DNA of 64,000 nt from Octopus sinensis (GCF_006345805.1 NC_042998.1:187426001-187490000), one strand, 5' to 3'. Numbered from the stretch's first letter, positions 1,632 to 57,849 are shown. A program made the numbers and translations. The notes: generated by a model not told the origin, from the letters alone.

Positions 1632-1708
1632 CGTGATATAGTTGGCATTGATATAATCTGTGAAAGGGTCATCATCAATTACATCTAGTTGCACTCGGCT
1701 ATGGTCAA
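1632..1708 (-). CDS. RPTP-like gene, PTP motif 2-3 exon ((F)DHSRVQLDVIDDDPFTDYINANYIT); gene continues beyond window start
   Basis: DHSRV.L and DYINANY motifs; 77-nt exon, the conserved length for this RPTP exon; tttttcaag acceptor, gtaagt donor. Confidence 0.96.
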
Positions 1709-2734
1709 CTTGAAAAATGAATATAACATATATGAAACAACAAAGGGAGTACAGGGAGTGGTATAAATTTATAATCTCTAGGAACGTCTTTATTTTATGA
1801 CAGAAGGTCACTTGGGGTTTAAAGGATGAGTTTTGAATAAGCTAGAAACATATGTAAATTACTTCTAATAACAACTTAACTTCTAGATTTTCATATGTGT
1901 GTGCATGCATGTGTGTGTGCATGTGTGTGAGTGTGTGTGTGTAAATGTTTAGATGCCTACATCATCGTTTAACGTCCGCTCTCCATGCTAGCATGGGTTG
2001 GACGGTTCGACCGGGGATCTGGGAAGCCAGAAGGCTGCACCAGGCTCTGGTCTTATCTGGCAATGTTTCTACAGCTGGATGCCCTTCCTAACGCCAACCA
2101 CTCCGTGAGTGTAGTGGGTGCTTTTTACGTGCCACCTGCACTAGTGCCAGGCGAGGCTGGCATCGGCCACGGTCGGATTGGTGCTTTTTACGTGCCACCG
2201 ACACGGAAGCCAGTCGAGGCGGCGCTGGCATTGGCCACGATTCGGATAGTGCTTTTTACATCTAAGTACATACAGATATGTTTCTGTCAGAAACACAAAC
2301 AGTGATGGGAAAAATGTATTTAAAAACTTTATTAATATCAAACAATAATACTGATCTTTGTTTACAAAGCCATTTGAGGACTTTCTTAGAGGCAACAATT
2401 CAATCAAAAGTACTAAGTTTTACCTATTTTTGACCTAACTTTAACCTATGCTCCTATATGAATCTAATCCATTACATCTGTATCTATGTACATACTTGAA
2501 TCAACCCTAACAATGGCACAGGACAGTTGTGCAAAGAAGTGCTGATCTCTGACGATGGAGGGGATCCGTAGAAGAGATAGATCCAGGAAGACATGAGACA
2601 AGGTGGTCAAGCATGATCTTCCCTGACTACTTCAGTCATTTTTTTTTTGATAAATTGATAAATTTCTTATAAAGATTTTATCCTATTTTTAAATTTTTAA
2701 TTTAACCGGAATATTTTCAGTGCTGAATTATTCT

Positions 2735-2902
2735 GCAGGAGTGGCTGTGTGGTAAGTAGCTTACCTACCAACCACATGGTTCTGGGTTCAGTCCCACTGC
2801 ATGGCATTTTGAGCAAGTGTCTTCTGCTATAGCCTCGGGCCGACCAATGCCTTGTGAGTGGATTTGGTAGACGGAAACTGAAAGAAGCCTGTCGTATATA
2901 TG

Positions 2903-2951
<49 letters not shown>

Positions 2952-3150
2952 TTGTGTGTCTGTGTTTGTCCCCCTAGCATTGCTTGACAACCGATGCTGG
3001 CGTGTTTACGTCCCCGTCACTTAGCGGTTCGGCAAAAAAGACCGATAGAATAAGTACTGGGCTTACAAAAATAAGTCCTGGGGTCAAGTTGCTCGATTAA
3101 AGGCGGTGCTCCAGCATGGCCACAGTCATATGACTGAAACAAGTAAAAGA
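2735..3150 (+). mobile_element. Octopus-type tRNA-derived SINE, family A (internal TA/TG microsatellite)
   Basis: A/B-box-like head tggctgtgtggtaag...ggttcagtccc, conserved core, gactgaaacaagtaaaaga tail. Further copies at about 14145-14570, 15078-15490, 31125-31500(-), 37611-37995, 38870-39272(-), 39970-40378(-), 43347-43730, 56317-56730(-), 57068-57475(-). Confidence 0.9.
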
Positions 3151-3179
3151 AAAGAAAGGAAGAATAAAGATCTACGTAC

Positions 3180-3312
3180 ATGGTAACACATTCAAAAATC
3201 GATTCTTCTTTTTATTTTGAAGCTTTTGAGCTTCAATACAGGGTAGGAATGTATCATTTGAGGTCTGGTCAGATTCCTCAGTAAGAATAAATGGATTCAC
3301 TTTGCCTATAAT
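3180..3312 (-). CDS. RPTP-like gene, PTP motif-1 exon (IIGKVNPF...PCIEAQKLQNKKKNRFLNVLP)
   Basis: catttcag acceptor, gtacgt donor, 133 nt, phase 0 to 1; KNRF.NVLP pTyr-recognition loop motif. Confidence 0.93.
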
Positions 3313-3789
3313 CTGAAATGAAACGTGTAATTATTGTTTGTTTTACTGTTCATTATCTGGTTTTATCATTATAAATTGCCATCACCAATCTCCTGATAAG
3401 AAAAAGAAAAACATCAAATTCCGGTTTCGTTAATATGTCCCAATTATTATTTATCAAAAGAATATTCTTAAGTTAGCACACAAATATCTAAGGCGTGTTT
3501 TGGCCCAGATATAATTAATGGCAGTTCTTTCGTTGCTTTGGTGTATTTCCTGCTACTGAAATAAGCAATTTGTTATGAGCTTCACTTGGAAAACAACCTA
3601 TTTATAACTATGGGAAACAAGAACTTACAAAGTGTGTCATCCATTGCAGAAATCTCAAGCAGTTTGTTATCCAAATGCACTCATCATAAAGGAACAAAAA
3701 CTAGAATTTTGAGAGTGCTTTCTTTCTCCCTGCCCTTCTCAGGAAGGCATCACATTGTGGTGACATATAAATATTATATACAATAATGA

Positions 3790-4340
3790 AATTACTGTTT
3801 ATAGTGCTCAGGTGCACTTACACCTCATCGGAGGTGTATGTACAGTACATACAATTATGTACAAAAGTCAGGAAAGTGAACAGTGTATGAATTATGATAC
3901 ACATGTGTACATGCATATGGAGCAGGGGATATCAGGTGTAGTGTTGGTGAATTTTAGGAAACATGGAGGTTTTAAAGGATGCAATGTCTCTGCAACTAAT
4001 AACCGATGCAGATAGTTTGTTCCATTCTTTGACAACTCTGAGTGTGAAAAAATGTTTCCAAAAGTCATGGGAGCTGTGCTGCTTTCTGACTTTGTAGGCA
4101 TGCCCATGTGTGTTAGACACATGAAGCTCAAAAAGTTGCTCAAGGTGGTTGTTGGCACAATGGTTAATAATTTTGTGGGTGTTTGTAATCCATTTCCATC
4201 CCTACTCAACCTGCTGTAGCTTTTTGTATGTATAACATCATATATCATAGTAAAATCACCCAATTATTTCATTATAGATGTCTGTATTCTCCCAATCTTA
4301 CCAATCTCATCTTTTTATCTCTTCTGTTTATCAAAACTAT
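3790..4340 (-). mobile_element. CR1/L2-clade LINE 3' end, same family as 11433-11936
   Basis: ORF 3932..4120 HAYKVRKQHSSHDFWKHFFTLRV and the same 3' UTR (gtgcacctgagcac). Confidence 0.88.
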
Positions 4341-4484
4341 CTAAATTTCAGTTGGTTGATGAACTTTTAAACAAGATATTTTCCAATTTTTTTTTTCACT
4401 TTTGAGATACATGCCAAACATTTTTCTTATTCTCTTAACCTAAGAGATTAAATGAAAACAATCAAATGATTTAAAGTGGATTAC

Positions 4485-4545
4485 CTTATAATCTTGGATA
4501 AAAGTTTTTGAATCCATATGTAGAAAATTCTTGATTTTGTATGGT
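4485..4545 (-). CDS. RPTP-like gene, wedge-region exon ((R)PYKIKNFLHMDSKTFIQDYK)
   Basis: tttcctgcag acceptor, gtaa donor, 61 nt, phase 2 to 0; resembles the RPI.IKNF...DS...EF segment preceding R3-type PTP domains (from memory of PTP10D/PTPRB). Confidence 0.82.
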
Positions 4546-6068
4546 CTGCAGGAAATTAAACACTCATGTTAACAAATGTTGAAGCTTTAAAATATTGAGT
4601 TATGACATTAAAATTACAATAACTCTAATTTTGTGATGATTCCTGATATATGTGGTATTAGCTTTGCCCCACTTGCAGAAAATGAGTCCATAGGATTATG
4701 TTTTAAGAACTTGAAATGATAACTTGGAAAAAAGAAATTAAGAAATCACTGCGGTTAAAACTACTTCCTATATCTCAAAAGCTCATTTTCCTTGATCTGA
4801 CATCCTTCTAAGAGTCTACAGAATCTACAAATGTTATTCTATAGTAAAATTTAGATTTTCAAAATCAACATTGGCTGTCATCTAAAAAAGTTTCATCAAG
4901 CAAGCACATTTTCTTCTTAGAAAACCCCATATATCTTTTTTAATTACTAGTAAATATTATTCTAATGCAATAACATTGTAGAAGAGTCATTTTATCAATT
5001 TAATAACCCATTAAAAATGGTGAAATTCACTTTCAAATTATTTCATGAGAAGTCAAAAATTTCTTTTGCCCAACTGTGACTTGGTTACTGATGCAACTCC
5101 ACTGTAATTCTTGGAAAGACTGACAATAGCAAGTTATTATAACAGCAGTTCTTTTTTTTTTTGTGTGTCTTTTTCTTTTTTCCTTTCATGTTGAAATTTA
5201 TATAGGGATATATGAACTTGCTATAACCATGAAGATTTTCTTGAGTCTATAACATCAGTCTTCAGTCAATCATCATTAGTCACATTTAGTTTCTGTTTTA
5301 TTCATTTATGCATTTATTTGCTTGTTTACAACATTACATATTATTGTCATTCTAACAATTTCTTCTTTGTTTTCTTGACAGTTAATTTTGAATGTATGCT
5401 ATATTAAAGTAGAACATTTCTTTACCATGCTACAAAATCTATAATTTATTTACAAAAAAATGAAGTAGGGTGATGGGATCAGAGGCAGTAGAATTGTGTC
5501 AACGCCTAGATCACAGCTGGATGACAAAATTTTGAAACCTTGTGAAATAAATTAAAAGTAAATTTAACAGGTTTCATGAGTATCTAAATGTCTAGAATGG
5601 TTCTTCTGAAGTGCAATTGCTACAGTTTCAATATATATCCTCAGATCAAGTCACATATTTGTCAAGTACAACTTCAAAATTGGTCAAATCAATTTCAGAT
5701 TATATGACAAAAAAATAATGGTTCGGCAAATAAGGTGCTGTGGACTTCATCGAAATTGAAACTATATTTTTGATTAACAGCTCCAGTTTCACATATATTG
5801 TTACCAATGAAAGGGCTTCAACAAGCTAAAATCATACACACCTTACTGAATTATAATATCAGAAAAAAAATAACCTGTTTGAATTATCAAATAGTGTTAG
5901 TGTATTATAAACATATAACATTTAAGTCAGACAATATTGGCTGACTTATTCTATGTTAGCAAAATAATTGCTTAGCAGGTCTAACAAACTCACTCTATAT
6001 ACAATATTGTCCATAACAAACCACAAGTTAGTACAAAAGAAAAGAAGAAAACAAAGGAAGGAACCAAC

Positions 6069-6128
6069 CTTTTATGTGATAGTGTTTTAAAAGGTCTTAA
6101 TTTCAAGAAATTAACGTTGCCAGTTGTC
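6069..6128 (-). CDS. RPTP-like gene, juxtamembrane exon (TTGNVNFLKLRPFKTLSHK)
   Basis: ataatctttcag acceptor, AG|gttggt donor, 60 nt, phase 2-2, bridges the TM exon and the next exon in frame. Confidence 0.7.
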
Positions 6129-10301: not shown

Positions 10302-10395
10302 TGTTTCAACTGACGGAGGAATAAATAAATGAAAACTAATATGACCAGAATGAGAATAGCAATGATAATTCCAAGCCACCAATAGGGAAAAACAA
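10302..10395 (-). CDS. RPTP-like gene, transmembrane exon (VFPYWWLGIIIAILILVILVFIYLFLRQLK)
   Basis: tatatttacag acceptor, gtaagt donor, 94 nt, phase 1 to 2, about 22 hydrophobic residues followed by a basic stop-transfer segment. Confidence 0.92.
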
Positions 10396-11315
10396 CTGTA
10401 AATATAGAATAGAATCAATTTATGTAACATATCAGTAATAAAGGCTTATAGTATTTAGATATTTAGAATGTTGGTAATTTTTTTTCATTAGATACAAGGC
10501 CAAATTTTTTAGGACTGGATTACCTTGATATATTTATTCATCAATCTTGGAGGATAAGAAAGATGATAAGTTCAATCACTCTGAGATTTGGAGTCAGAAT
10601 CAAGAAGAGCAAAGTTAAATATGGCAATATATCAAGCGCTACACATTATTGTCTTGACCATCTCTATTGAGTTTACAAATCTAGAATACTATTATTTAAC
10701 TTGATCAGAAAAAAATATAATGGTGAGATTGAATACCATGTGAAATTCAGGTGATTTTGTTTTTCCACCTATATTTATGTCTAGTTTTCTTGATCTTGCT
10801 GCCATGGCTGGTGACTCTAATGGATATATTGGACAATGTGATGTTGGGTACTCCAATGAAGACAGAGAGTACGTTATGGAATACAGAATGAAAGATCAAG
10901 ACTCTTGGAGATTTGTGGCACAAGTGATCTAACCATTTTATAACACTAACATTAGAAAACACGTCAGCTACCTTGCATACCAATCACTTGGGCAAACATA
11001 CAAGCCCAATTCACTTTAGACTGACAAGAAAACAGAATAGACAGATGATTTGAATACTAATATACCAAAGTAGTCCCAGACGCAGAAGATAATTTGAAAA
11101 AGAGAGACATGAAACTGAAAGATATCTCAGCAATCTATGAGTTCAAAGAAGGAGGAACCAACCTATAACATAAAAGACAATTATGAGATAATTTGCTGGG
11201 AGCAACAAACATGATCTATGGAAGGTTCCAATCAAACAGAAGATGATATGATGGAAGTTGATCAAATGGAAGATGATCCATGTAATATCCTTCTTAAACA
11301 ATTATAATTCCTTAC

Positions 11316-12272
11316 GAGTAGTCGTAGTTATTAAAGGTGTTGTGATTGCATATTGAGTTGATGTTTCTTCAGATGTGTTCATTGATCGTGTTTGTGTGTC
11401 AAACTGTGTAACTGGTCGATGCTGTTACATAACACTTGGAATTCGCATCATCAGTTTGGAATCCCTATCTTGCTCAGAACATTGACCTCCTGGAATCTGT
11501 CCAGAGACGTGCAACCAAACGCATACCCTCCATCAGACACCTACCATATTCTGAGCGCCTTGTTTCCCTGGGCATGGATTCACTGAAGCTCCGGCGTCTG
11601 GCGACGGACTTGGTAAACACCCACAAGGTTATCAACCACCTCACCAACAACAACACTGAACACCTTTTTGATCTCCATGTGTCTAACACACGTGGACATG
11701 CCTACAAAGTCAGAAAACAACACAGCTCCCATGACTTTCGGAAACATTTTTTCACGCTCAGAGTTGCTGAAGCATGGAATAAACTGCCTGCGTCAGTTGT
11801 TGACTGCCATGACACTGCATCCTTTAAGGCCCTCATGCTTTCCGAAATCCGCCAAAACTACACCTGATTATATATACACTTTAGATGAGTTGTAGTGCAC
11901 CTGAGCACTGTACACAATGTTTATTATTATATATAAGAAGTGTCTTCTCCAGTTGTGTTAATTAACATTGTATTCCGAGATGCACTGAATGGAGTTGTTA
12001 GTTCAGAATCATTGAGTTTTGTTCCATTCTCAAGTGCGGCAAGTAATGCTGAAGCATAAGATACAGTTGATGATATTAAATTTCCTTGTGCATTAAATGG
12101 TTGCGCATTTGCAGGTATATCTGTTGCTCGTGATACTTCTGCTATATTCCTTTTTACCCTGATTTCCTTTATATCTGGCATTGCCTCTATTTGGCCTGCT
12201 TTTGAGTCTGTCATGAAATCATTGTTTTTACTAATGTGATGATTTGGTGGGAAAGGAAAAGATGCTGGCTGA
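11316..12272 (-). pseudogene. Disrupted duplicate of the stalk exon (pseudo-exon)
   Basis: Aligns to 37420-36960. Lacks the native acceptor (fused to intron sequence at 12272), carries an approximately 500-bp antisense LINE insertion (stop at 11929-11927) and a 14-bp frameshift deletion near 11412; donor gtaagg retained. Confidence 0.85.
11433..11936 (+). mobile_element. 5'-truncated CR1/L2-clade LINE 3' end inserted in the stalk pseudo-exon
   Basis: ORF 11436..11867 (LESVQRRATK, LRRL..DL, NTRGH, FFTLRV..AWNKLP); (tta)n tail; possible TSD acataa/atataa. Confidence 0.92.
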
Positions 12273-13030
12273 AACGTAAAGCTGATCTTGGGAATATTTC
12301 AATTCAGAACGTAAAGATATGCAACTAAATATCAAAGGCTGATGTGCTGCCACTCTACCAATGCACTACTATAATACAATAGTGTAGCTAGCGTGTCTGC
12401 CATCCGGGGTGGCCCTTCAGTCTGCCACACCTGGGCTGCCACAAAAAGTACATATTGCCTAAAGCAGACCCAAAAATGGCACCACACCCATAAAAGTACT
12501 GCACAGGGCAGACAACCCCTCTGTTCCCCTCTAGCTACACTAGTGCTCTAATAATAGTTAAAATTATGCTACACATACTGTAATGTATACTGAAACACTA
12601 TCATCTTTTTAATATACAGTATGATACACCATCTTAACCACCATCATCACCATTGTAGGTAGTGGCATCATAATTGTTGTTCTTTTCACAGCTTTGCAAG
12701 CAGTTTGATCAGTGGCATTCACTCACCTTCCTCCCACTCTTACCATCCTCCTACTCTCACATTTCTCCCACTCTCACCTTCCTCCCAACAAACATTAATG
12801 CACTTTCATCTTCCTAAGAGAACTTGAAGAATTAAATTTTTTGGTTAAAATATGAAAAACAACCTTCAGTCCTCAGTTATTCCAATCTAAACCCATTTTA
12901 TCATCTCCTTCACAAACACATTGAATGTATTACTCGACAAGTCAACAATACAGATTGATTAGCAAGAAATAGGAACCGAATTTCACACAAATTACCTCAT
13001 AGTCTCATAATGTGGTATATGTACATTATT
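12270..13030. repeat. Segmental duplicate of intron 26538-27298
   Basis: Collinear alignment; about 18 differences in the first 348 nt (hand count, about 95% identity). Confidence 0.93.
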
Positions 13031-13197
13031 CCTGAAAAGAAGGCAGGCTTGTCATGGTTAGAATACCATTGATCACTAGTTTGTTGAATCAGGGTTGGCC
13101 TCAAGTTAAACAACTATATTGCACTATATGGCTGTCCTTACAAAAGCATACTTGATGAACACATGGACATTGATTAAGAGCTCAACTTTTTACTTAC

Positions 13198-13326
13198 TTT
13201 TTACACAGATGTTTTCACTTTGCTTGTAATTGTCAGAGCAAGTACATCTCTTTGTTTCAGTGGAACAATAGGCATTACGAGCCTTACACTGATCCCCTTC
13301 TTCACATTTTTCACCAAATTTTTTCT
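13198..13326 (-). CDS. RPTP-like gene, six-Cys module 4 (KKFGEKCEEGDQCKARNAYCSTETKRCTCSDNYKQSENICVK)
   Basis: tatatttcag acceptor, gtaagt donor, 129 nt, phase 1-1, C-x5-C-x6-C-x6-C-x-C-x10-C. Confidence 0.88.
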
Positions 13327-15652: not shown

Positions 15653-15775
15653 TGTCTACACATTTTCCGTGTTTCCAAAAATAGACCTCAAAACAATCAC
15701 ATCTGTGTTGCTCATTACAGTGGGCCCTTTTATCAAGACACTCTTCCACGGTACAGTTTTTACCATAGGCTAGCT
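15653..15775 (-). CDS. RPTP-like gene, six-Cys module 3 (LAYGKNCTVEECLDKRAHCNEQHRCDCFEVYFWKHGKCVD)
   Basis: ctcttcacag acceptor, gtaagt donor, 123 nt, phase 1-1, C-x4-C-x6-C-x5-C-x-C-x10-C. Confidence 0.88.
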
Positions 15776-20608: not shown

Positions 20609-20647
20609 CTTTCAATATATCTGTAACTTTTATCTATTTTTAAAAAA

Positions 20648-21690
20648 CTATTTCTAAGAGTAATTGTAGTCCTTTCTGTAGTTCAATGTCAATGTTCCGT
20701 TGTTTTTAACTTACTTTTTTCACACTTAGTTCCAAGACGAAAATATTTATCTTCACAGACACACTTTTGAGAGCTGCAAATGGCAAATTCATTTATGCAG
20801 GATGTATTTGTTTCACAATTCTCATTAAGTGCCAATTCTGCAATGAAACACATTAATTATAAAAATTAAACTGTGTACACCAACTTATAATAATTATTAT
20901 ATTAAAATTTATGGAACTCAACAACAGAAATAATGCATTTCTGAATTGTTAGATAATGCTATTAGATTTTCTCTTATGATAATATATTATTGTTATTATA
21001 TTTATTATTCATAATTTTAGGAAGATATCAAAAGATTTCTTTCTTTAAAAATGAATTAGGTACATTTTGGGAGAACATGCATCAAAGTTTCAAGTTTAAC
21101 AAGAATGTTTATGATCAAAATGTGTTGGAGGGTAACAAAACAAATTGAAAATATAAAGAAAAATTACACTGGAAAACACTCAAGAAAGTGTAACGGTTTG
21201 TTGTTAAGGTGTTGGTTGCCAGTATGCAAGATGGAAGAGAACAGTGATAGTGGTTGTAAAGAAATATTTATTTACCGTTACTTTAATATCTACCATACCA
21301 CAACAGGTAGGCTAGTGTAATAGTATAACACAGTTTGTAAAGCATGCAAGGTAAAAAGAGTTAATTTTGGCCTGTATATGAGTGTACACAAAGTAGTATA
21401 TATATAGAGATATGGTGATGTTGCAGAGAAAAGAAAGGGAGCTAATGAAAATGAGAGAGTGTGGATGAGACACTTTCTACATTGTTGTCACTCTCTGAAG
21501 TTATCTCAGTAGAGACAGTATTTTGTTTGAGCTGGTCAGCCGCCTCTCTGTCAGTCGCTCTCACTAACTGCTTTGGCTTACAGAGGGAGTTCTTGTTTTT
21601 CTAACTATCCAAAACCAGCCAGAAGGATAGACATATTGTTGAGAACAATAGATTTCGTTGGCGGTCTGTTATGTCTATTCTAGCTTTTGG
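20648..21690. repeat. Segmental duplicate of 28735-29780 including the Cys module exon
   Basis: Collinear near-identical alignment over about 1.05 kb; 5 differences in about 220 nt of intron next to the exon (hand count). Confidence 0.95.
20715..20837 (-). CDS. RPTP-like gene, six-Cys module 2, recent duplicate of module 1 (LALNENCETNTSCINEFAICSSQKCVCEDKYFRLGTKCEK)
   Basis: Same splice sites as module 1, 123 nt, phase 1-1, all six Cys kept; lies within the duplicated block 20648-21690. Confidence 0.88.
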
Positions 21691-21966
21691 TGAAATAGAA
21701 GAGGTTAGAAGGGTCAAGTGGCAAAGATATTATTCTGCTTAGCAAAGGCATCTGGCAAATGTAACAGCTCTCACTCACAGGAAAACTACTGTTTTACCGT
21801 GAGAAAAGTGCTGTTGAACTGTTAAGTGAAATTTGGCCATCGAGGATTGAATCCACACTATACCTGGGTCAATAAAATAAGTACCACTTGAGTACTGCAG
21901 TTGATGTAATCAACTTATCCCCTATCCAAAATTGCTGGCCTTGTACTAAAATTGGAAACAATTACT

Positions 21967-22003
<37 letters not shown>

Positions 22004-22509
22004 TAATAATAATAATGTTTTTTTTTTTTTGTATCTAAGAAGGAATGCAGGATTTTCTCATTCATATTTTGAATTTCTGTGTTTCTATGTTAATAAGGGA
22101 TTACACTGGGGTCGATGTAATTGACTTACCCCATCCCACCAAATTGCCAGTCTTTTGCCAAAATTTCTAACCTTAGATGACGAAACCTTTCCTAAGTATC
22201 CTAGCTGACCATACTAATACTGTTTTCTGGAACTGCACTAAACTAAGTTTTATGCCTATTTCCTCTATGCATCTGTTCATATATCTAAAGATAGTTCCTG
22301 ATGCACATTTAACTGCTGGAATGTATTTTGCCCACATTTTCCATAACCTCTGTAACTCAATGGCTATGTCCTGGTACTTTGATATTTTTTCTATATTTTG
22401 AAGTTGACTTTCTCATCATTTGTGACTGTAAAATCAACTACCTGGCTCTTCTATTCACTTTGTCTGCTAATACTACTAAATCAGGCCTTCATCATTATCG
22501 TCGTCATCA

Positions 22510-22927
22510 TCATCATCATTTATCATCCATTTTCCATGCCGGCATAGGCTGGATGGTTCGACAAGAGTTAGCAAGCCAGAGGGCTGAACCAGGTCCCAGT
22601 TGCCTGTTCAAACATGGGTTTTATAGCTAGATGACCTTCCAAATGACAGCCACTCCAGAGAGTGTACTGGGTGCTTATTACGTAGTACTGGCACAAGTGC
22701 TTTTTATGTGACACCAGCATGGCACAGGTACTTCCTATGTAGTACCAGCATGGATGCTTTTTACATGGTGCCAGTACCCACAAGGTCACCAAGTGGCTTG
22801 CAAGACAAAGATGTCTCAGCTGAGAGAAGTGGTCATGTGACAGGCGAGAGGTTGGGGTATGATCAGAGGATACAGATAGCTGTTTTGTGACAAGAAATAT
22901 TTGGCTACCCCAATAGGATAAAAAAGC

Positions 22928-22962
<35 letters not shown>

Positions 22963-24150
22963 GGGCCTACCTACAGGGAATAGTGGGTAGAAGGGTATGA
23001 GTCACACAGATGAATTAAAGATGTATCATAACAGTGTGAGGGGATGTATTTAGAGATAAGAAGTGACATTGAGAGGAACTGGAGGGGCATATAGCGGGTG
23101 ATAGAGGTTTTGGTAAGATGGGTTGGGGGTGAGTTTTGCCATAGGACAGAATTATGTGTGCTTGATGAGGAGAGGGAGTGATGGCCATAAAGGACATACC
23201 TCTATGTATGGATGGCCACAATTTTACTTAGCTTGACATGTCTTCTCAAGCACACCAAATTGCCAGAAGTCTCATTCCCTTGTCATCCCCTCATTGTGGC
23301 TCAATATCTGAAGATCCTTTCTCACCACTCTGTCCTACATCTTCCTCTATCTACCCCTTCTACAGGCTCCCTCTACAGCTTAGAGATAGGTACTTCTTTA
23401 TGCAGTTGTTCTCATCCATACACATCCAATAACCACACTCGCACAGTCTTCTCTCATGCACATTACATCTGATGCCTCTTGTACCTGGTTATTTTCTTAA
23501 ATTATTTACACTCTGTCACACATGCACAGTGACATTACCCATCCAGTGGTGTATGCTGGCTTCATTTCTTTCAAGCCTTCACTTATCCTCTATAGTCACA
23601 TCCCATGATTCACTGTCATGGAGCATCGCTATTCATATACAGATAGCATACAATCTGCCTTTCATGCTGAAGGAAACCCCCTTTGTTACCAACTTTGTCA
23701 GCCCATTCTTACTCTAGCAACTACACTGCCAGAGCGTCCTCCTCCAATGTTAACTTGGTTACCTAGGTAACAGAAGTTATCTACTACTTCTAAGGAACCC
23801 CACCCACCAGACATTTGAGGAAAGCTATATTCTGTACATTCTTTGTGTTTATTGTACCTGCACACCTGCCACACACACAGACTACTTTCTCTATACGGCC
23901 GGGTTAGTAACGAAAGGGTGAGATTTGGGTTCAAATTTACATTTAAATAACAACAGGTTCTCACGGCCGGGTTGGTATTATGAACCAAAAAATAATTTTT
24001 CGGTTGGGTACGGCCGGGTTAGTAACGAAAGGGTTAACCTTCCTGTGACACTGCTGCACTTCTTATGTGTCCATAGCTTGCACTGGGTACACTGTATGGA
24101 GTTTCAACTACTATTTTTCTATATATTGAGCAGGGCCAGCTCCCTGGAGG
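22510..24150 (-). mobile_element. Degenerate RTE-clade LINE pieces with internal insertions
   Basis: LEVVDNFCYLG...VARVRMG segment and 3' UTR units; interrupted at 22860-23180 and 23893-24034. Confidence 0.7.
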
Positions 24151-24474
24151 GATCAGTCACACCCTTATTTTTCAAGATATTTGTTTCATTGGGAAATGAA
24201 GAAAAGACCTTTTGTTGGTATTTTCCTGTCAACCAGAAATGTCAGCTTGATATTTCCTGATCCCTCTATCCTCAACTCATTCTTCTAACCTCCTTTATTA
24301 AAATAGAGACTGAGAGATTATTCAACATAGGTTATTGGTATCCTATGGTTAAACATGTTCACCATCATCACTATGATATGTTGTTAGTCACAACTGCAGT
24401 AGCAGCAACAGGGATTAACTACCATAACCAGCCATGCTTTGTCGTACAAATCCATATACATACCTATTTCTTTA

Positions 24475-24695
24475 CTACCTACAAGGGGCTAAACACAGAA
24501 GAGACAAACAAGGACAGACAAACGGATTAAGTCGATCATATCGACCCCAGTGTGTAACTGGTACTTAATTAATCGACCCCGAAAGGATGAAAGGCAAAGT
24601 CGACCTCGGCGGAATTTGAACTCAGAACGTAACGGCAGACGAAATACTGCAAAGCATTTCGCCCGGCGTGCTACCATTTCTGCCAGCTCGCCGCC
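24475..24695 (-). mobile_element. tRNA-derived SINE, family B
   Basis: gcggcgagctggcagaa head, gagttcaaattccgccgaggtcgac B-box region. Copies at 540-755, 33535-33760, degenerate 26480-26620. Confidence 0.85.
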
Positions 24696-25005
24696 TATAC
24701 ATATACATACCTTTAACCCTGGTCAACATCACCAGAAGAGCACAGCTTGCCTGACACTAACATACACACACATCAACAAGCTTAAAAATTTACCCTGTTT
24801 AACTCTCTCCCTCTCTCACTCGCTCGCTCGATTGCTGAGACTGTTTTGTTGATTTTTTGTAGTTTAAAGTAAATAAATATTTTTATGTCGTAGAGAAGAT
24901 TCATCAATTATTCCTTTAATAAACACTTCATTCACCGCCCTTCTCTACAACATATCAATACCAATCATCTATACTGTAAAACAAACATATACACTGGTGA
25001 TTTAA

Positions 25006-25226
25006 CCCTTTAGCATTTAAACCGGCCATATCCGGCCTAAAGTATTCTGCCTGTTTTATGGTCAAACTGGCCAGATTTGGTCTCTCACACCAACCCTACA
25101 ATATCGTTTTAAAAATTAACAGCTACCTCATCAAAATCTCATAGCTACAAGATAATGCATGATTAGTTCAAAACTACGAGGATGAAAAAGCATTAATTTG
25201 GGTAGAATAATGCGAACACTAAAGGG
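25006..25226. mobile_element. piggyBac-type MITE, same family, opposite orientation
   Basis: TTAA flanks, TIR ccctttag, internal similarity to 1307-1527. Confidence 0.82.
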
Positions 25227-25529
25227 TTAAACCAAACACTATTACTGGTAACATACACATTACAACATGCTAGTATGCAGCAACATAAAGTATGGAATAA
25301 TTAAGCTTTCATTGTAATACAAGCTACCATTAGCAGCCCACTATTATTAGTATATTTCTTAAAATTAAAACACTGAGGTTAATTTTTCTTTTCCAGCTTG
25401 CTTATGTTTGCTATTGTACATTTAGTTAGGGTTTCTTGCATCACAATTTTGACATATATGGTGAAATTTACGCTATACTGCTGATAACAGAAACACTATT
25501 TTATATTTTTGGTTTGGTCTGGAGAAATG

Positions 25530-25935
25530 AGCTGCACTTATAGCCATGGAAGCACTCCGTTGGTTACGACGACGAGGGTTCCGGTTGATCCGAATCAACA
25601 GAACAGCCTGCTCGTGAAATTAACGTGTAAGTGGCTGAACACTCCACAGACACGTGTACCCTTAACGTAGTTCTCGGGGATATTCAGCGTGACACAGAGA
25701 GTGACAAGGCCGGCCCTTTGAAATACAGGTACAACAGAAATAGGAAGTAAGAGTGAGAGAAAGTTGTGGTGAAAGAGTACAGCAGGGATCACCATCATCC
25801 CCTGTCGGAGCCTCGTGGAGCTTTAGGTGTTTTTCGCTCAATAAACACTCACAACGCCCGGTCTGGGAATCGAAACCACGATCCTATGACCGCGAGTCTG
25901 CTGCCCTAACCACTGGGCCATTGCGCCTCCATAGT
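25530..25935 (-). mobile_element. tRNA-derived SINE, family C
   Basis: ggaggcgcaatggcccagtggttag...ggtttcgattccc tRNA-like head followed by a non-tRNA body. Confidence 0.8.
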
Positions 25936-27499
25936 AGCCCCTCTCAGACTAGTGAGATACATATGATATTCTTCTTGAACAATTTTAAGACAACAGCTAC
26001 AGAAGAAACATGAACAGGGACAGAATTCCTGAGTGCCAACGCTTCAGCAAGAAAGGAATTGGTAAAGTAATTAATATGAACCCTGTGGAGACATATTATG
26101 GGTAATGAGAGTGGAAGAGGTAAGTGAGGAAAGACTGAATGGAAGTAACACAAGATCTGTCGGTTCTGACAGCAGAGGTCATTGTAGCAGTGGTAGATAA
26201 TGCAGAGAGGAGACGGCATGTCAATGAGCCAGAGGTTGGAGTATTACGAGTGACTTCATACCAATCATTCAGGTTGTGTTTCTCTGGATGCAGCCTAGGA
26301 TGGCTGTAAGTTTAGCACCAGGATCACGTTGAGACACAGAGAATACCTAGGTTTGCTACATATGTATGTGTAGAGGTGAGCAGTTAAACTAAAGTATAAA
26401 TCACATCTCATTAGCTGATAATTTAAATTATCATTCATAATGGAAACACAAGGACCACATATTTATGAGGAAAAGGGACTGTTGCTTATACTAGGTTCAG
26501 CAGAATACTGGAACTTATTTTATTGACTCTAGAAAAATGAAACGTAAAGCTGATCTTGGGAAGATTTTAATTCAGAATGTAAAGATATGCAACTAAATAT
26601 CAAAGGCTGATGTACTGCCACTCTACCAATGCACCACTCTAATACAATAGTGTAGCTAGCGTGTCTGCCATCCAGGGTGGCCCTTCAGTCTGCCATACCT
26701 GGGCTGTCACAAAAAGTACATATTGCCTACAGCAGACCCAAAAGTGGCACCACACCCATAAAAGTGCTGTACAGGGAAGACAAACCCTCTGTTCCCCTCT
26801 AGCTACACTAGTGCTCTAATAATAGTTAAAATTATGCTACACATACTGTACTGTATACTGAAACACCACCATCTTTTTAATATACAGTATGATACACCAT
26901 CTTAACCACCATCATCACCATTGTAGGTAGTGGCATCATAATTGTTGTTCTTTTCACAGCTTTGCAAGCAGTTTGATCAGTGGCATTCACTCACCTTCCT
27001 CCCACTCTTACCATCCTCCTACTCTCACATTTCTCCCACTCTCACCTTCCTCCCAACAAACATTAATGCACTTTCATCTTCCTAAGAGAACTTGAAGAAT
27101 TAAATTTTATGGTTAATATATGAAAAACAACCTTCAGTCTTCAGTTATTCCAATCTAAACTCATTTTATTGTCTCTTTCACAAACACTTTGAATGTATTA
27201 CTCGACAAGTCAACAATACAGATTGATTAGCAAGAAATAGGAACTTAATTTCACATAAATTACCTCATAGTCTCATAATGTGGTATATGTACATTATACC
27301 TATGTAGCAAGTCATAAAAGGTGGCAATATTACATAATGTTCGTTTGCCCGAACAAGCACAATTGTTGGTATCCCAATGGTTAAAATTACTGCCCATATA
27401 TGAATTCTAAACTTTCGTAAAAGAAATCTTTCACGAAATACAGTTCTTAGAATTCGGATATGAGTAGTTATAAAAACCCTGATTTTTGGGAAATTACTC

Positions 27500-28710
27500 A
27501 AATGGCTGCACCAGGCCCCAATCTTGATCTGGAAGAGTTTCTACAGCTGGATGCCCTTCCTAATGCCAACCACTCTGAGATTGTAAGTGGGTGCTTTTTA
27601 CGTGCCACCAGCACGGGACCCAGTCAGGTGGTACTGGCAACGACCTCGCTCAAATCTTTTTACACATGCCACCAGCACAGGTGCCAGTAAGGCGATGCTG
27701 GTAACGATCACACTCAAATGGTGCCCTTTTATGTGCCACTGGTACGGAAGCCGGTTAGCCGCTCTGTCAACGATCACCCTTATATGGTGCTCTTTGCACC
27801 TCGCTAGCACGGATGCCAGTCATCGAATTTGATTTTGATTTTGATTTCGATTTCACTTGCCTCAACAGGTCTTCGCAAGCAGAGTTTAGTGACCAAAGAA
27901 GGAAAAGGTATGCATAAGCGGGCTGGTGACGCTCCTGGCATAAGCCACAGATTATGGTCTCATTTGGCTTGCCGCGTCTTCTCAAGCACAGCATATTTCC
28001 AAAAGTCTCAGTCGCTAGTCATTTCCTTGGTGAGGCCTAAAGTTCGAAGGTCGTACTTCACCACTTCATCCCAGGTCTACTGCTTCCACAGGTTCCCTCA
28101 ACAGCTAGGGTGTGGCACTTTTTCACACAGCTATCCTCATCCATTCTCACCACGTGACCATACCAGCGCAGTCGTCTCTCTTGCACATCACATCTAATGC
28201 TTCTTAGGTCCAACTTTTCTCTCGAGGTACTTACACTCTGTCTAGTATGCACACTGACATTACACATCCATCAGATCATACTGGCTTCATTCCTTGCGAG
28301 CTTACACATGACCTCAGCAGTCACAGCCCATGTTTCACTGCCATGTAGCATGGCTGTTCATACACAAGTGTCATACAGTCTACCTTTTACTCTGAGTGAG
28401 AGGCCCTTTGTCACCAGCAGAGGTAAGAGCTCTCTGAACTTTGCCCAAGATATTCTTATTCTAGCAGTTACACTTTCAGTGCACCCGCCTCCGCTACTGA
28501 CTTGGTCCCTAAGTAACGGAAGCTATCAACTACTTCTAGTTTTTCTCCCTGGAATGTGGCAGAAGTTCGTCTCTGCACATTTTCAGTGTTTATCGCTCCC
28601 GAGCATCTGCCACATACAAAAACTATCTTCTCAATTAGCCTTCCCTTGATATTACTGCACCTCTTATGTGTCCATAGCTTACACTGGGTACATCTTATAG
28701 AGTTTCTACC
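27500..28710 (-). mobile_element. RTE-clade LINE 3' portion
   Basis: ORF 28058..28267 ERRLRWYGHVVRM plus 3' UTR repeat units. Confidence 0.88.
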
Positions 28711-28799
28711 TACACCTCTATTTTTTTTTTTATTATTTCTAAGAGTAATTGTAATCCTTTTTATAGTTCAATGTCAAAGTTCTGTTGTTTTTAACTTAC

Positions 28800-28922
28800 T
28801 TTTTTTACACTTAGATTCATCTTCAAAATAATCATCTTGACAGACACACTTTTGATTTCTGCAAATGGCAAATTCATTTATGCAGGATGTATCTCTTTCA
28901 CAATTCTCATTAAGTGCCGATT
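28800..28922 (-). CDS. RPTP-like gene, six-Cys EB/EGF-like module 1 (SALNENCERDTSCINEFAICRNQKCVCQDDYFEDESKCKK)
   Basis: gtgtttcattgcag acceptor, gtaagt donor, 123 nt, phase 1-1, spacing C-x5-C-x6-C-x4-C-x-C-x10-C. Confidence 0.88.
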
Positions 28923-29789
28923 CTGCAATGAAACACATTAATTATAAAAATTAAACTGTGTACACCAACTTATAATAATTATTATATTCAAATTTATGGA
29001 ACTCAACAACAGAAATAATGCATTTCTGAATTGTTAGATAATGCTATTAGATTTTCTCTTATGATGATATATTATTGTTATTATATTTATTATTCATTAT
29101 TTTAGGAAGATATCAAGAGATTTTTTTCTTTAAAAATGAATTAGGTACATTTTGGAGAACATGCATCAAAGTTTCAAGTTTAACAAGAATGTTCATGATC
29201 AAAATGTGTTGGTGGTTAACAAAACAAACTGAAAACACAAAGAAAAATTACACTGGAAAACACTCAAGAAAGTGTAACGGTTTGTTGTTAAGGTGTTGGT
29301 TGCCAGTATGCAAGATGGAAGAGAACAGTGATAGTGGTTGTAAAGAAATATTTATTTACCGTTACTTTAATATATACCATACCACAACAGGTAGGCTAGT
29401 GTAATAGTATAACACAGTTTGTAAAGCATGCAAGGTAAAAAGAGTTAATTTTGGCCTGTATATGAGTGTACACAAAGTAGTATATATATAGAGATATGGT
29501 GATGTTGCAGAGAAAAGAAAGGGAGCTAATGAAAATGAGAGAGTGTCGGATGAGACAGCTTCTACATTGGTAAACTCCATTGTTGTCACTCTCTGAAGTT
29601 ATCTCAGTAGAGACAGTATTTTGTTTGAGCTGGTCAGCCGCCTCTCTGTCAGTCGCTCTCACTAACTGCTTTGGCTTACGGAGTTCTTGTTTTTATAACT
29701 ATCCAAAACTAGCCAGAAGGATAGAGATATTGTTGAGAACAATAGATTCCGCTGGCGGTCTGTTATCTCTATTCTAGCCTTTTGATCCC

Positions 29790-36959: not shown

Positions 36960-37425
36960 TAGTAGTCGTAGTTATTAAAGGTGTTGTGGTTACATATGGA
37001 GTTGATGTTTCTTCAGATGTGTTCACTGATCGTGTTTGTGTGCCAAACTGTGTTACATTCTCAGTGTCATTGGTCGATGCTGTTACATAAGAAGCGTCTT
37101 CTCCAGTTGTGTTAATCAACATTGTATTCCGAGATGCACTGAATGGAGTTGTTAGTTCAGAATCATTGAGTTTTGTTACATTCTCAAGTGCGGGAAGTAC
37201 TGCTGAAGCATAAGTTGATGATGTTAAATTTCCTTGTGCATTTATTGGTGGCGCATTTGTAGATATATTTATTGCTTCTGATCCTTTTGGTTTACTCCTT
37301 TTTACCCTGATTTCCTTTAAATCTGACATTGCCTCTATTTGGCCTGCTTTTGATTCTGTCACGAAACCATTGCTTTTACTAATGTGATGATTTGGTGAGG
37401 AAGGAAAAGATGCTGGCTGACCATG
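36960..37425 (-). CDS. RPTP-like gene, Ser/Thr-rich stalk/pro-region exon (155 codons) with RVKR proprotein-convertase site at 37308-37297
   Basis: 24-T tract + ag acceptor, 466 nt open (phase 0 to 1), donor gtaagg; HGQPASFPSSPNHH...EIRVKRSKPKG...PLITTTT; 8 N-x-S/T sequons; overlaps ORF 36922..37362. Confidence 0.8.
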
Positions 37426-39077: not shown

Positions 39078-39112
<35 letters not shown>

Positions 39113-41127: not shown

Positions 41128-41181
41128 CTTTACAAGGAATGAGACCACCCAAAGAATGGTGTATACTGGAAAAGTCTTCAT
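41128..41181 (-). CDS. RPTP-like gene, first coding exon: signal peptide MKTFPVYTILWVVSFLVK (exon 41184-41128, ATG at 41181)
   Basis: Acceptor tttttttttacag, 3 nt UTR then ATG, 18 codons with a basic n-region and hydrophobic core, consensus donor AAG|gtaagt in phase 0 matching the next exon. An acceptor implies a non-coding exon further upstream, which I could not locate. Confidence 0.8.
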
Positions 41182-56285: not shown

Positions 56286-56316
<31 letters not shown>

Positions 56317-56317
<1 letters not shown>

Positions 56318-57007: not shown

Positions 57008-57045
<38 letters not shown>

Positions 57046-57510: not shown

Positions 57511-57516
57511 ATATAC

Positions 57517-57557
<41 letters not shown>

Positions 57558-57558
57558 C

Positions 57559-57603
<45 letters not shown>

Positions 57604-57753
57604 CATATATATACATATATATATATACATATAATATACATATATTATACATATATATATACATATACATATATATATACATATATATATACATATATAT
57701 ATACATATATATATATATATATTATATATATATATATATATTATATACATATA

Positions 57754-57789
<36 letters not shown>

Positions 57790-57792
57790 CAC

Positions 57793-57841
<49 letters not shown>

Positions 57842-57849
57842 CATATAAT

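What the first reader, a model, noticed from the sequence alone, without database searches (positions are those of the whole stretch)
20715..28922. Duplicated Cys-module exons differ only at non-synonymous sites while their introns are nearly identical
Seen (hand count): modules 1 (28922-28800) and 2 (20837-20715) differ at 12 of 40 codons (17 nt, about 14%). All 12 change the amino acid, none is purely synonymous, and all six Cys and both splice sites are kept. The adjacent upstream intron differs at only about 5 of 220 nt (about 2%). Changes cluster before the last Cys (QDDYFEDES versus EDKYFRLGT) and reverse its charge. Inference: diversifying selection on an extracellular binding surface, as seen in immune, allorecognition or toxin genes.
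Basis: partly seen in the sequence, partly recalled or inferred. Interest (0 to 1): 0.85.

Follow-up and report, generated by a model that had tools for sequence, protein, structure and literature searches.

The report
Octopus phosphatase exons: conversion plus selection
The two near-twin exons are the first two cysteine-rich modules in the outer part of an octopus receptor tyrosine phosphatase: recent copying between them made their introns and front halves alike, their back halves carry much older differences, and the whole outer part of the protein is evolving unusually fast.

Summary
In detail: 17/123 nt and 12/40 codons differ, all changes are non-synonymous, the six Cys and both splice sites are kept, and the upstream intron differs at 5/220.

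The reading is only partly right. The exons are EB modules 1 and 2 (Pfam PF01683) of a receptor-type tyrosine phosphatase on the minus strand. Its layout is signal peptide, Ser/Thr/Asn-rich exon, four EB exons, transmembrane exon, then phosphatase exons. The collinear Octopus bimaculoides locus (LOC106876748, about 9% non-coding divergence) serves as an outgroup.

Nine of the 17 differences, including the charge-reversing cluster before the last Cys, are module-specific states shared with O. bimaculoides EB1 and EB2. They therefore predate the split of the two loci. The upstream intron and the exon's 5' half instead group by genome (2-5% within the window, 9-33% between loci), so sequence was copied non-reciprocally after the split. 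The boundary lies in mid-exon, and intron identity is not a clock for the duplication.

Fast protein evolution is nevertheless real. Between orthologues, EB1-4 give dN 0.27 against dS 0.12 (ratio 2.0-2.8, p 0.02 to 6e-4). The cytoplasmic exons give 0.4-0.5. All Cys are invariant.

This is a known kind of pattern in an unstudied gene.

The parts
41128..41181 (-). Signal-peptide coding exon (MKTFPVYTILWVVSFLVK), with ATG at 41181-41179 and donor gtaagt after 41128, phase 0
   Evidence: Read directly. 17 of 18 residues match the start of O. bimaculoides LOC106876748.
36960..37425 (-). 'P' exon, 466 nt, phase 0 to 1. It encodes a 155-aa Ser/Thr/Asn-rich stretch with about eight N-x-S/T sequons and can splice in frame to the EB exons.
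   Evidence: Open frame, poly-T/AG acceptor and A|GTAAGG donor. It is the syntenic orthologue of the O. bimaculoides P exon: 64% amino-acid identity, pN 0.192, pS 0.162.
28717..29784 (-). Copy 1 of the shared 1.06-kb tract: upstream intron, EB1 exon and about 80 nt of downstream intron
   Evidence: 94% identical, gaps included, to 20633-21689. Four-way comparison with O. bimaculoides.
28800..28922 (-). Module 1, the EB1 exon (SALNENCERDTSCINEFAICRNQKCVCQDDYFEDESKCKK)
   Evidence: Pfam EB 27.5 bits. The 3' half shares 8 module-specific sites with O. bimaculoides EB1.
28833..28878 (-). Interval holding the 3' boundary of the copied (converted) tract, inside the EB1 exon
   Evidence: The last site grouping by genome is 28878. 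The first site grouping by module is 28833.
20633..21689 (-). Copy 2 of the shared tract, the likely donor
   Evidence: The 5' halves of both window exons are EB2-like: INEFAIC in the window against KDEFASC in O. bimaculoides EB2.
20715..20837 (-). Module 2, the EB2 exon (LALNENCETNTSCINEFAICSSQKCVCEDKYFRLGTKCEK)
   Evidence: Pfam EB 25.9 bits. Against its O. bimaculoides orthologue the exon differs at 29/123 and the flanks at 35/592, p=3e-8.
15653..15775 (-). Module 3, the EB3 exon, 123 nt, phase 1-1
   Evidence: 50% amino-acid identity to O. bimaculoides EB3.
13198..13326 (-). Module 4, the EB4 exon, 129 nt, phase 1-1
   Evidence: Pfam EB 25.5 bits. 62% identity to O. bimaculoides EB4.
10302..10395 (-). 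Transmembrane exon (IVFPYWWLGIIIAILILVILVFIYLFLRQLKQ), phase 1
   Evidence: Read directly. 83% identity to the O. bimaculoides orthologue.
1635..6121 (-). Span holding four cytoplasmic or phosphatase-domain exons: 6121-6068, 4544-4482, 3309-3184 and 1706-1635 (tblastn coordinates). The rest of the gene runs off the window start.
   Evidence: 90-94% amino-acid identity to O. bimaculoides. TM and cytoplasmic exons together give dN 0.056 and dS 0.104.
26538..27301 (-). Non-coding block X, copy b. It pairs with 12270-13033 and is a second tract evolving in concert.
   Evidence: 30/764 differences, no indels, and a perfect 239-bp run (P=0.00045). Four-way comparison: 3.9% within the window, 8-11% otherwise; informative sites 9 by genome, 0 by position.
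12270..13033 (-). Non-coding block X, copy a, in the intron just downstream of EB4
11296..12272 (-). Dead copy of the P exon (P_a). It is broken by a LINE fragment (11433-11929, with a 7-bp target duplication) and a 14-nt deletion. No counterpart was found in O. bimaculoides.
   Evidence: No second P-like sequence in L001.

Best explanation
The two exons are EB modules 1 and 2 of the ectodomain of a single-pass receptor-type protein tyrosine phosphatase. This gene is the orthologue of O. bimaculoides LOC106876748, or a copy of it about 9% diverged.

The exon-against-intron contrast has two superimposed causes.

1. Mosaic history (shown). The EB1/EB2 duplication is older than the split between the window and the O. 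bimaculoides locus. After that split, roughly 0.9-1 kb was copied non-reciprocally between the two sites in the window's lineage. The mechanism was gene conversion or a similar templated repair, most likely EB2 to EB1. The copied stretch covers the upstream intron and about the first 65-90 nt of the exon. That reset those parts to 2-5% divergence. The exon's 3' half kept its old module-specific sequence: an acidic loop in EB1 and a basic loop in EB2. Nine of the 17 differences are of this old kind.

2. Fast protein evolution (shown as a rate excess; selection is inferred). Amino-acid-changing sites in the four EB modules have changed 2-3 times faster than silent or non-coding sites since the split. 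This holds to a lesser degree for the Ser/Thr-rich exon. The six Cys and a Tyr stay fixed, and the transmembrane and phosphatase parts are conserved.

I read this as positive selection on the loops of a glycosylated, disulphide-braced extracellular surface that binds an unknown partner. Occasional conversion moves variants between neighbouring modules.
For: Gene identity:
- Pfam EB E=2e-18 on the four spliced modules.
- O. bimaculoides P0054 has signal peptide, P region, 4 EB modules, TM and Y_phosphatase (E=4.5e-73).
- Its locus L001 is collinear with window 1-50487. Aligned non-coding mismatch is 9.05% over 33.4 kb.

Mosaic:
- Distal upstream intron: 2.2% between the window copies, 9.1-9.6% to O. 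bimaculoides copy 1.
- Exon 5' half: 4.8% within the window, 24-33% between loci, with 8 informative sites grouping by genome and 1 by module.
- Exon 3' half: 23% within the window and 15% for EB1 against its orthologue, with 0 sites by genome and 8 by module. Fisher p=0.0004.
- Sites 28919, 28833, 28831, 28824-28821, 28817 and 28806 carry the same module-specific bases in both genomes.

Independent signs of concerted evolution:
- First 190 bp of the tract: 4.0% and 3.1% within genomes, 7-10% between them.
- Block X: 3.9% within the window, 8-11% otherwise, with informative sites 9:0 and a perfect 239-bp core.

Selection:
- EB1-4: dN 0.268, dS 0.119.
- EB2-4, untouched by the conversion: dN 0.257, p=0.002 against gene-wide silent sites.
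- TM and cytoplasmic exons: dN 0.056.
- EB2 exon 29/123 against its flanks 35/592, p=3e-8.
- Cys invariant in all 8 modules.
- Within the converted part, the exon still has 6/83 differences, all amino-acid changing, against 19/681 in intron, p=0.045.
- Differences between the live P exon and its dead copy fall 17, 16 and 4 by codon position. Monte-Carlo P(3 or fewer synonymous)=0.005. Derived changes in the live copy number 11, 8 and 2 by codon position.
Against: - Only two genomes and pairwise counts were used; no site or branch model was run.
- EB silent sites are few (76). Against them alone, p is only 0.019.
- The non-coding baseline comes from alignable HSPs, so it may underestimate the neutral rate. 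The P exon's own pS is 0.16.
- The window's species is not identified. L001 could be a diverged paralogous locus rather than the orthologue. That would change the word 'speciation' but not the branching order.
- Direction of copying (EB2 to EB1) rests on amino-acid resemblance of the 5' halves only.
- In the window, copy 1 is bounded on both sides by LINE-derived sequence in a way not seen in O. bimaculoides. The copying may therefore have been a more complex templated rearrangement than simple conversion.
- No expression or binding data exist.
Confidence: 0.7

Rival explanations
1. The duplication is as young as the introns suggest (2-3%), and all 17 exon differences arose since then through diversifying selection on the loop before the last Cys.
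For: Exon 13.8% against flanks 3.0%, p=2.7e-6. dN/dS about 7.9. Six Cys and the open frame kept: P=0.03-0.065 under random change.
Against: Nine of the 17 differences, including 4 of the 5 bases in the adjacent run (the fifth has diverged between the two EB2 copies), are shared with O. bimaculoides EB1 and EB2. In the 3' half, 8 informative sites support orthology and none the alternative. The window's introns are closer to each other (2.2%) than to the other genome (9%), so they are not a clock. The flagged loop is the most conserved part of EB1 and EB2 between loci: 12/17 and 10/17 residues.
Confidence: 0.05
2. There is no positive selection. The ectodomain is simply under very weak constraint, so it drifts at about the neutral rate. 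The excess over silent and intron sites arises because the neutral rate is underestimated. Conversion alone explains the m1/m2 pattern.
For: The P exon gives pN 0.19 against pS 0.16, a ratio near 1.2. EB against its own silent sites gives only p=0.019. Aligned non-coding HSPs are biased towards conserved DNA. Ser/Thr-rich regions usually tolerate change.
Against: EB dN (0.27) is twice the gene-wide dS (0.13), p=6e-4, and 2.8 times the non-coding value. The EB2 exon is four times as diverged as its own well-aligned flanks, p=3e-8. All Cys are invariant in 8 modules, so the modules are not decaying. P-exon copy differences avoid third codon positions: 17, 16 and 4.
Confidence: 0.17
3. The exon differences are mutational by-products. 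In this view, multinucleotide errors occurred during error-prone repair synthesis when a 1-kb patch from the EB2 region was pasted into a LINE. The pasting would have been a microhomology-mediated template switch.
For: Runs of 3 and 5 adjacent changes (P=0.0002). Divergence rises at both ends of the tract. In the window, copy 1 is bounded by LINE sequence whose coordinates are only about 96 bp apart. Short shared motifs sit at both junctions: CAAAAG(G)C and TAGA. Multinucleotide mutations are known to mimic positive selection (bioRxiv 10.1101/165969).
Against: Most of the 5-base run (4 of its 5 positions) and six more sites are present in the O. bimaculoides orthologues. They are therefore inherited, not repair errors of a recent event. 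Only the 3-base run in EB2 (28858-28856) is lineage-specific. In O. bimaculoides the LINE lies uninterrupted upstream of copy 1. The window's downstream LINE piece is only 67% like it, against 91.6% for the upstream piece. So the LINE flanks are a separate rearrangement specific to this lineage.
Confidence: 0.05
4. Assembly artefact: two haplotypes or paralogues were merged or falsely duplicated.
For: The two 1-kb tracts are near-identical and lie 8 kb apart.
Against: The window contains no Ns. Both copies sit at syntenic positions in an independent assembly of another genome, each with its own module-specific 3' half. The annotated O. bimaculoides protein contains both modules.
Confidence: 0.01

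Closest known systems
CD45 (PTPRC), the vertebrate leukocyte receptor tyrosine phosphatase
   Same: Both are single-pass receptor phosphatases. Both have a glycosylated Ser/Thr-rich N-terminal stretch followed by a Cys-rich extracellular part. In both the ectodomain evolves under positive selection while the intracellular part is conserved (stated for CD45 in PMC4379584, which cites Filip and Mundy 2004). The same contrast is seen here: dN 0.27 in the EB modules against 0.056 in the cytoplasmic exons.
   Different: The ectodomains are not homologous. This one has EB modules, not the CD45 Cys-rich and fibronectin-III domains. The O. bimaculoides protein has one phosphatase domain against two in CD45 (my own knowledge). 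Tissue of expression is unknown. This is a functional analogy only.
Accelerated evolution of Cys-rich secreted peptides in molluscs (conotoxin superfamilies; Mytilus MgCRP-I)
   Same: Variable loops sit between invariant cysteines while the introns of paralogues stay 98-99% identical (PMC3862624). MgCRP-I has a hypervariable mature peptide with six invariant Cys (PMC4558851).
   Different: Those are small signal-pro-mature toxin or defence peptides in multigene families. Here the modules are internal exons of a receptor phosphatase. The intron identity is shown to come from recent copying between two exons of one gene.
Concerted evolution by gene conversion between tandem repeat units, with selection on particular repeats (for example the abalone egg receptor VERL; from my own knowledge, not checked here)
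   Same: Paralogous units within a genome are more alike than orthologous units between genomes. The tracts are mosaic with sharp boundaries. Positive selection acts on the protein.
   Different: Only two of the four modules are involved. The tract is about 1 kb and is mostly intron. The boundary lies inside an exon, so one exon is half converted and half old.
EB module (Pfam PF01683), an EGF-like six-Cys module of invertebrate extracellular proteins
   Same: Cys spacing C-x5-C-x6-C-x4-C-x-C-x10-C. Three of the four modules score above the curated cut-off individually. The AlphaFold model shows two beta-hairpins.
   Different: Only 13 proteins among 1.84 billion cluster representatives reach E<=0.001 against module 2, and none exceeds 48% identity. 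No solved structure matched significantly.

Membership tests
EB module (Pfam PF01683) | Match to the family HMM above the curated gathering score (24.3 bits) | tested here: met
   Four spliced modules: 66.6 bits, E=2e-18, 4 stretches. Singly: m1 27.5, m2 25.9, m4 25.5 bits. m3 alone gave no hit.
EB module (Pfam PF01683) | Six conserved cysteines with an EGF-like C-x-C at Cys4-Cys5, and a fold of two beta-hairpins | tested here: inconclusive
   The Cys pattern is present and invariant in all 8 modules of the two genomes. The AlphaFold2 model has pLDDT 84.5 with hairpins at 18-27 and 32-39. The Foldseek search of the PDB gave only non-significant hits; the best was Pfs25 (a protein of EGF-like domains, from my own knowledge), E=5, TM 0.60. 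Disulphide pairing was not tested.
Classical receptor-type protein tyrosine phosphatase | Signal peptide, single transmembrane helix and a cytoplasmic Y_phosphatase domain with the HC(X)5R catalytic loop | tested here: inconclusive
   All features are met in the O. bimaculoides orthologue: Y_phosphatase E=4.5e-73 and VHCSAGVGRTG. In the window, the signal-peptide exon, the TM exon and four juxtamembrane/phosphatase-domain exons are present at 83-94% identity. The catalytic-loop exon lies beyond the window start.
Genes under positive (diversifying) selection | Non-synonymous rate significantly above the neutral (synonymous or non-coding) rate | tested here: met
   EB1-4 between orthologues: dN 0.268, dS 0.119, p=0.019. 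Against gene-wide silent sites p=6e-4, and against non-coding DNA p=4e-15. Without the converted EB1: ratio 1.95, p=0.002. These are pairwise counts only; no codon site models were run.
Genes under positive (diversifying) selection | High allelic polymorphism at the variable sites within populations | not testable with these tools
   No population data are available here.
Concerted evolution by non-reciprocal copying (gene conversion) | Paralogues within a genome are more alike than orthologues between genomes over a bounded tract, with orthology restored outside it | tested here: met
   Distal intron: 2.2% within the window, 9.1-9.6% between loci. Informative sites run 8:1 by genome in the exon's 5' half and 0:8 in its 3' half, p=0.0004. 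Block X gives 9:0.
Conotoxin-like hypervariable secreted peptide genes | A small precursor with signal, pro-region and a single mature Cys-rich peptide, belonging to a multigene family | tested here: not met
   The modules are internal exons of an 813-aa receptor phosphatase in O. bimaculoides.

The most novel reading that the evidence does not exclude
This phosphatase could be a cephalopod counterpart of CD45. On this reading it is a blood-cell (or gamete or sucker) surface phosphatase whose glycosylated EB-module ectodomain is locked in an arms race with a pathogen or a partner molecule. Copying between neighbouring module exons would then serve as a way to move new loop variants from one module to the next. 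That would make it a germ-line diversity mechanism, not mere homogenisation.
Probability: 0.1. Interest if true: 0.7.

Novelty: new member of a known kind. Interest (0 to 1): 0.4.

Why it matters
It is a clean worked example of how a contrast between identical introns and divergent exons in duplicated exons can mislead. A copying tract that ends inside an exon makes old paralogue differences look like a burst of recent adaptive change.

It also identifies an unstudied octopus receptor tyrosine phosphatase. Its ectodomain (a Ser/Thr-rich stretch plus four EB modules) evolves 2-3 times faster than neutral DNA, while its catalytic side is conserved. In vertebrates that signature marks surface receptors caught in host-pathogen or recognition conflicts. 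The gene is therefore a reasonable candidate for such a role in cephalopods, where such molecules are, to my knowledge, little characterised.

Tried and rejected
1. Multinucleotide mutation or repair error as the source of the 5-base run. I favoured this until the outgroup arrived. It was rejected because four of the run's five bases are shared with O. bimaculoides EB1 and EB2.

2. Copy 1 as a young templated insertion from copy 2 into a LINE. This was suggested by collinear LINE flanks with a 96-bp gap and short shared motifs. It was downgraded for three reasons:
- Copy 1 exists at the syntenic site in O. bimaculoides with longer homology at both ends.
- The LINE there is uninterrupted.
- The window's downstream LINE piece is not its orthologue: 67% against 91.6%.

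3. A divergence profile that rises at both ends of the tract as the whole explanation. It is real, but the four-way test supersedes it.

4. A micro-conversion donor for the clusters inside the window. None was found.

5. More EB modules or a phase-1 signal-peptide exon found by pattern search. There are only four modules. The pattern scan for a signal exon failed because the real one is phase 0.

6. Word-indexed protein searches with the four modules and with the P exon returned nothing, although a homologue exists. Exact-ORF look-ups and a metagenome scan were empty.

7. The Foldseek search of the PDB was not significant.

8. Global alignment of exons with 300-bp flanks gave inflated flank divergence wherever lineage-specific insertions sit. 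Only EB2, cyt1 and cyt2 flanks were usable.

9. RNA editing as the source of the P-exon differences. A/G changes are only about 10 of 37, counted by eye from the codon list.

Full report
OBSERVATION. On the minus strand, 28922-28800 and 20837-20715 are 123-nt exons, each bounded by ag| and |gtaagt, and both are phase 1-1. They differ at 17 nt in 12 of 40 codons. Every changed codon changes the amino acid and all six Cys are kept. The 220 nt upstream differ at 5 sites, the whole upstream part of the shared tract at 22/848 plus four indels, and the 66 nt downstream at 5. Exon against flanks gives p=2.7e-6. Nei-Gojobori gives Sd 0.5/21.2 and Nd 16.5/98.8, a ratio of about 7.9, but p is only about 0.07 within the exon because silent sites are few. 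The differences are clustered, with runs of 3 and 5 adjacent bases (P=0.0002 under random placement). The similarity is a tract of only about 1.06 kb (29784-28717 against 21689-20633), and its non-coding divergence is itself uneven.

WHAT THE EXONS ARE. The window holds exactly four such exons on the minus strand: 28922-28800, 20837-20715, 15775-15653 and 13326-13198. Spliced together they match the Pfam EB module at E=2e-18. Three of the four pass the curated cut-off on their own. An AlphaFold2 model of module 2 has pLDDT 84.5 with two beta-hairpins, but no solved structure matched significantly.

An exhaustive HMMER search with module 2 found only 13 proteins at E<=0.001. One is O. bimaculoides LOC106876748, 813 aa. 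Its sequence shows the whole gene: signal peptide, a Ser/Thr/Asn-rich region, four EB modules, a transmembrane helix and one tyrosine-phosphatase domain (Y_phosphatase E=4.5e-73, VHCSAGVGRTG).

Its genomic locus is L001 (GCA_001194135.2, CM046602.1). It is collinear with window 50487-1 in reverse orientation, introns and transposons included. Mismatch is 9.05% over 33.4 kb of aligned non-coding DNA.

The window's gene model on the minus strand is:
- signal exon 41181-41128
- P exon 37425-36960
- EB1-EB4 as listed above
- TM exon 10395-10302
- cytoplasmic and phosphatase exons at 6121-6068, 4544-4482, 3309-3184 and 1706-1635

The gene then runs off the window start. The best named relatives of a LINE reverse transcriptase in the window are from Octopus sinensis, O. 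bimaculoides and O. vulgaris. The source is therefore an octopus, but the species was not identified. If L001 is a diverged paralogous locus rather than the orthologue, read 'split of the two loci' wherever 'speciation' is implied. The branching order is unaffected.

THE DECISIVE TEST. O. bimaculoides has both copies at syntenic positions, so four sequences can be compared segment by segment. The window copies are w1 and w2, and the O. bimaculoides copies are o1 and o2.
- Distal upstream intron: w1/w2 2.2%, w1/o1 9.6%, w2/o1 9.1%.
- Proximal upstream intron: all pairs 3.5-6.6%.
- Exon 5' half: w1/w2 4.8%, o1/o2 24%, between loci 24-33%. Eight informative sites group by genome and one by module.
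- Exon 3' half: w1/w2 23%, w1/o1 15%, w2/o2 23%, o1/o2 37%. No site groups by genome and eight group by module.

The switch in mid-exon is significant (Fisher p=0.0004) and lies between 28878 and 28833. Nine of the 17 differences carry the same module-specific bases in both genomes: 28919, 28833, 28831, 28824-28821, 28817 and 28806. Four bases of the 5-base run are among them. At protein level, EB1 ends QDDYFEDESKC in the window and KDDYFEDKSTC in O. bimaculoides. EB2 ends EDKYFRLGTKC and NNKYFRRGSMC.

Three conclusions follow. The duplication predates the split of the two loci. The acidic and basic loops are old and maintained, and they are the best conserved part of EB1 and EB2 between loci (12/17 and 10/17 residues). 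The near-identity of the intron and the exon's 5' half reflects non-reciprocal copying after the split. Both window 5' halves look like EB2 (INEFAIC against KDEFASC in O. bimaculoides EB2 and KVLFTTC in EB1). The likely direction is therefore EB2 to EB1, but that is an inference.

Copying of this kind is not a one-off here. In the first 190 bp of the tract, the copies differ by 4.0% and 3.1% within each genome but 7-10% between genomes. A second, purely non-coding pair (12270-13033 and 26538-27301) differs at 30/764 with a perfect 239-bp core (P=0.00045). In the four-way comparison that pair shows 3.9% within the window against 8-11% otherwise, with informative sites 9:0 by genome.

IS THERE SELECTION? 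Between the two loci:
- EB1-4: dN 0.268, dS 0.119, ratio 2.3, p=0.019.
- Against all 274 silent sites of the gene (dS 0.132): ratio 2.0, p=6e-4.
- Against non-coding DNA: ratio 2.8, p=4e-15.
- Leaving out the converted EB1: ratio 1.95, p=0.002.
- P exon: pN 0.192, pS 0.162.
- TM plus cytoplasmic exons: dN 0.056, dS 0.104.

Amino-acid identity runs 94% (signal), 64% (P), 49-62% (EB), 83% (TM) and 90-94% (cytoplasmic). EB2 is a clean orthologous pair: the exon differs at 29/123 and its well-aligned flanks at 35/592 (p=3e-8). All six Cys and one Tyr are invariant across the eight modules.

Inside the converted part, the two window exons have already diverged again at 6/83 sites, all amino-acid changing, against 19/681 in the converted intron (p=0.045).

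There is a further, independent hint. The window carries a dead copy of the P exon (12272-11296). It is broken by a LINE fragment and a 14-nt deletion, and no counterpart was found in O. bimaculoides. It differs from the live exon at 17, 16 and 4 sites by codon position, with 33 non-synonymous and 2 synonymous codons. Monte-Carlo P(3 or fewer synonymous)=0.005 with base-specific rates. Polarised with O. bimaculoides, 21 changes are on the live copy (11, 8 and 2 by codon position; P=0.013) and 9 on the dead one.

The rate excess is shown. That it reflects positive selection on a binding surface is an inference.

STRUCTURAL CONTEXT, UNRESOLVED. In the window, copy 1 is bounded on both sides by LINE-derived sequence (30466-29777 and 28717-27656). 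The LINE coordinates of the two pieces are about 96 bp apart, and short shared motifs sit at the junctions. This first suggested a patch pasted into a LINE.

O. bimaculoides contradicts the simple version:
- The LINE there is uninterrupted and lies upstream of copy 1.
- Homology between the two copies extends further at both ends.
- The window's downstream LINE piece is only 67% like the O. bimaculoides one, against 91.6% for the upstream piece.

O. bimaculoides also has an EB4-like pseudo-exon with its intron downstream of EB1, which the window lacks. These are lineage-specific rearrangements, and their order needs a third genome.

COMPARISON WITH WHAT IS KNOWN. The closest working analogy is vertebrate CD45. 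Its glycosylated ectodomain evolves under strong positive selection while the intracellular part is conserved (PMC4379584). The ectodomains are not homologous.

The pattern of conserved introns with variable Cys-framed exons is classic for conotoxins (PMC3862624) and for Mytilus MgCRP-I (PMC4558851). Those are small secreted peptides, and this gene fails that membership test.

Multinucleotide changes are a known cause of false signals of positive selection (bioRxiv 10.1101/165969). Here they turned out to be inherited paralogue differences. No paper mentions the O. bimaculoides gene.

VERDICT. The m1/m2 contrast is chiefly a conversion mosaic laid over an old duplication. The ectodomain nevertheless evolves faster than neutral DNA on a fixed Cys scaffold. 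This is a new member of known kinds of phenomena, in an unstudied gene. Interest is moderate.

Noticed in passing
window 11296-12272 (minus strand), with a LINE fragment at 11433-11929: A dead copy of the Ser/Thr-rich P exon lies in the intron between EB4 and the TM exon. Homology runs only from the acceptor to 11 nt past the donor. It carries a LINE-fragment insertion with a 7-bp target duplication and a 14-nt deletion. No counterpart was found in O. bimaculoides. Its differences from the live exon avoid third codon positions (17, 16 and 4).
   Followed up: partly
window 12270-13033 and 26538-27301: A 764-bp non-coding pair, 96% identical, with no indels and a perfect 239-bp core. Both copies also exist in O. 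bimaculoides (L001 about 38441-39268 and 24112-24834), where they differ by 11%. The pair is evolving in concert in the window's lineage.
   Followed up: yes
window 27656-28717 and 29777-30466; L001 18060-20279: The LINE pieces flanking copy 1 are nearly contiguous in LINE coordinates. The upstream piece is 91.6% identical to the O. bimaculoides LINE, but the downstream piece is only 67% identical to it. The downstream piece is 90% identical to a different O. bimaculoides LINE copy (L001 46461-47056). The order of events is unexplained.
   Followed up: partly
L001 21476-22703 (O. bimaculoides): Downstream of EB1, O. bimaculoides carries a copy of the intron upstream of EB4 plus an EB4-like pseudo-exon (22596-22703, 69% identity to EB4). 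The window has no counterpart.
   Followed up: no
window 7717-9589, 27656-30466 and 51923-53474: A LINE family whose reverse transcriptase (RVT_1) is followed by a PHD/C1-like zinc finger. Copies within the window are 68-73% identical.
   Followed up: partly
window 2735-3161, 31112-31503, 37612-37996, 38858-39278, 39967-40382, 43334-43743, 56317-56725 and 57068-57472: A repeat of about 400 bp, probably a SINE, present in at least eight copies on both strands at 80-92% identity. Each copy contains a short TG/CA-type microsatellite.
   Followed up: no
window 45613-46119 (+); L001 5180-6322: An open frame syntenic with an O. bimaculoides gene call that hits Helitron_like_N. A mariner-like frame lies at 47963-48295.
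   Followed up: no
window 56259-58006 and 58984-60821: Long AT-rich microsatellite and tandem arrays. Also two young tandem duplications: 59977-60543 against 60255-60821 at 97.5%, and 58984-59237 against 59146-59399 at 87%.
   Followed up: no
tools (against 38, 62): The word-indexed protein search returned nothing for the four modules or for the P exon. Yet O. bimaculoides LOC106876748 shares words such as AYGKNC, SPNHHISK and TTPFSASRNTMLI with them. Only the exhaustive HMMER search found it. A negative result from the indexed search should not be read as absence.
   Followed up: yes
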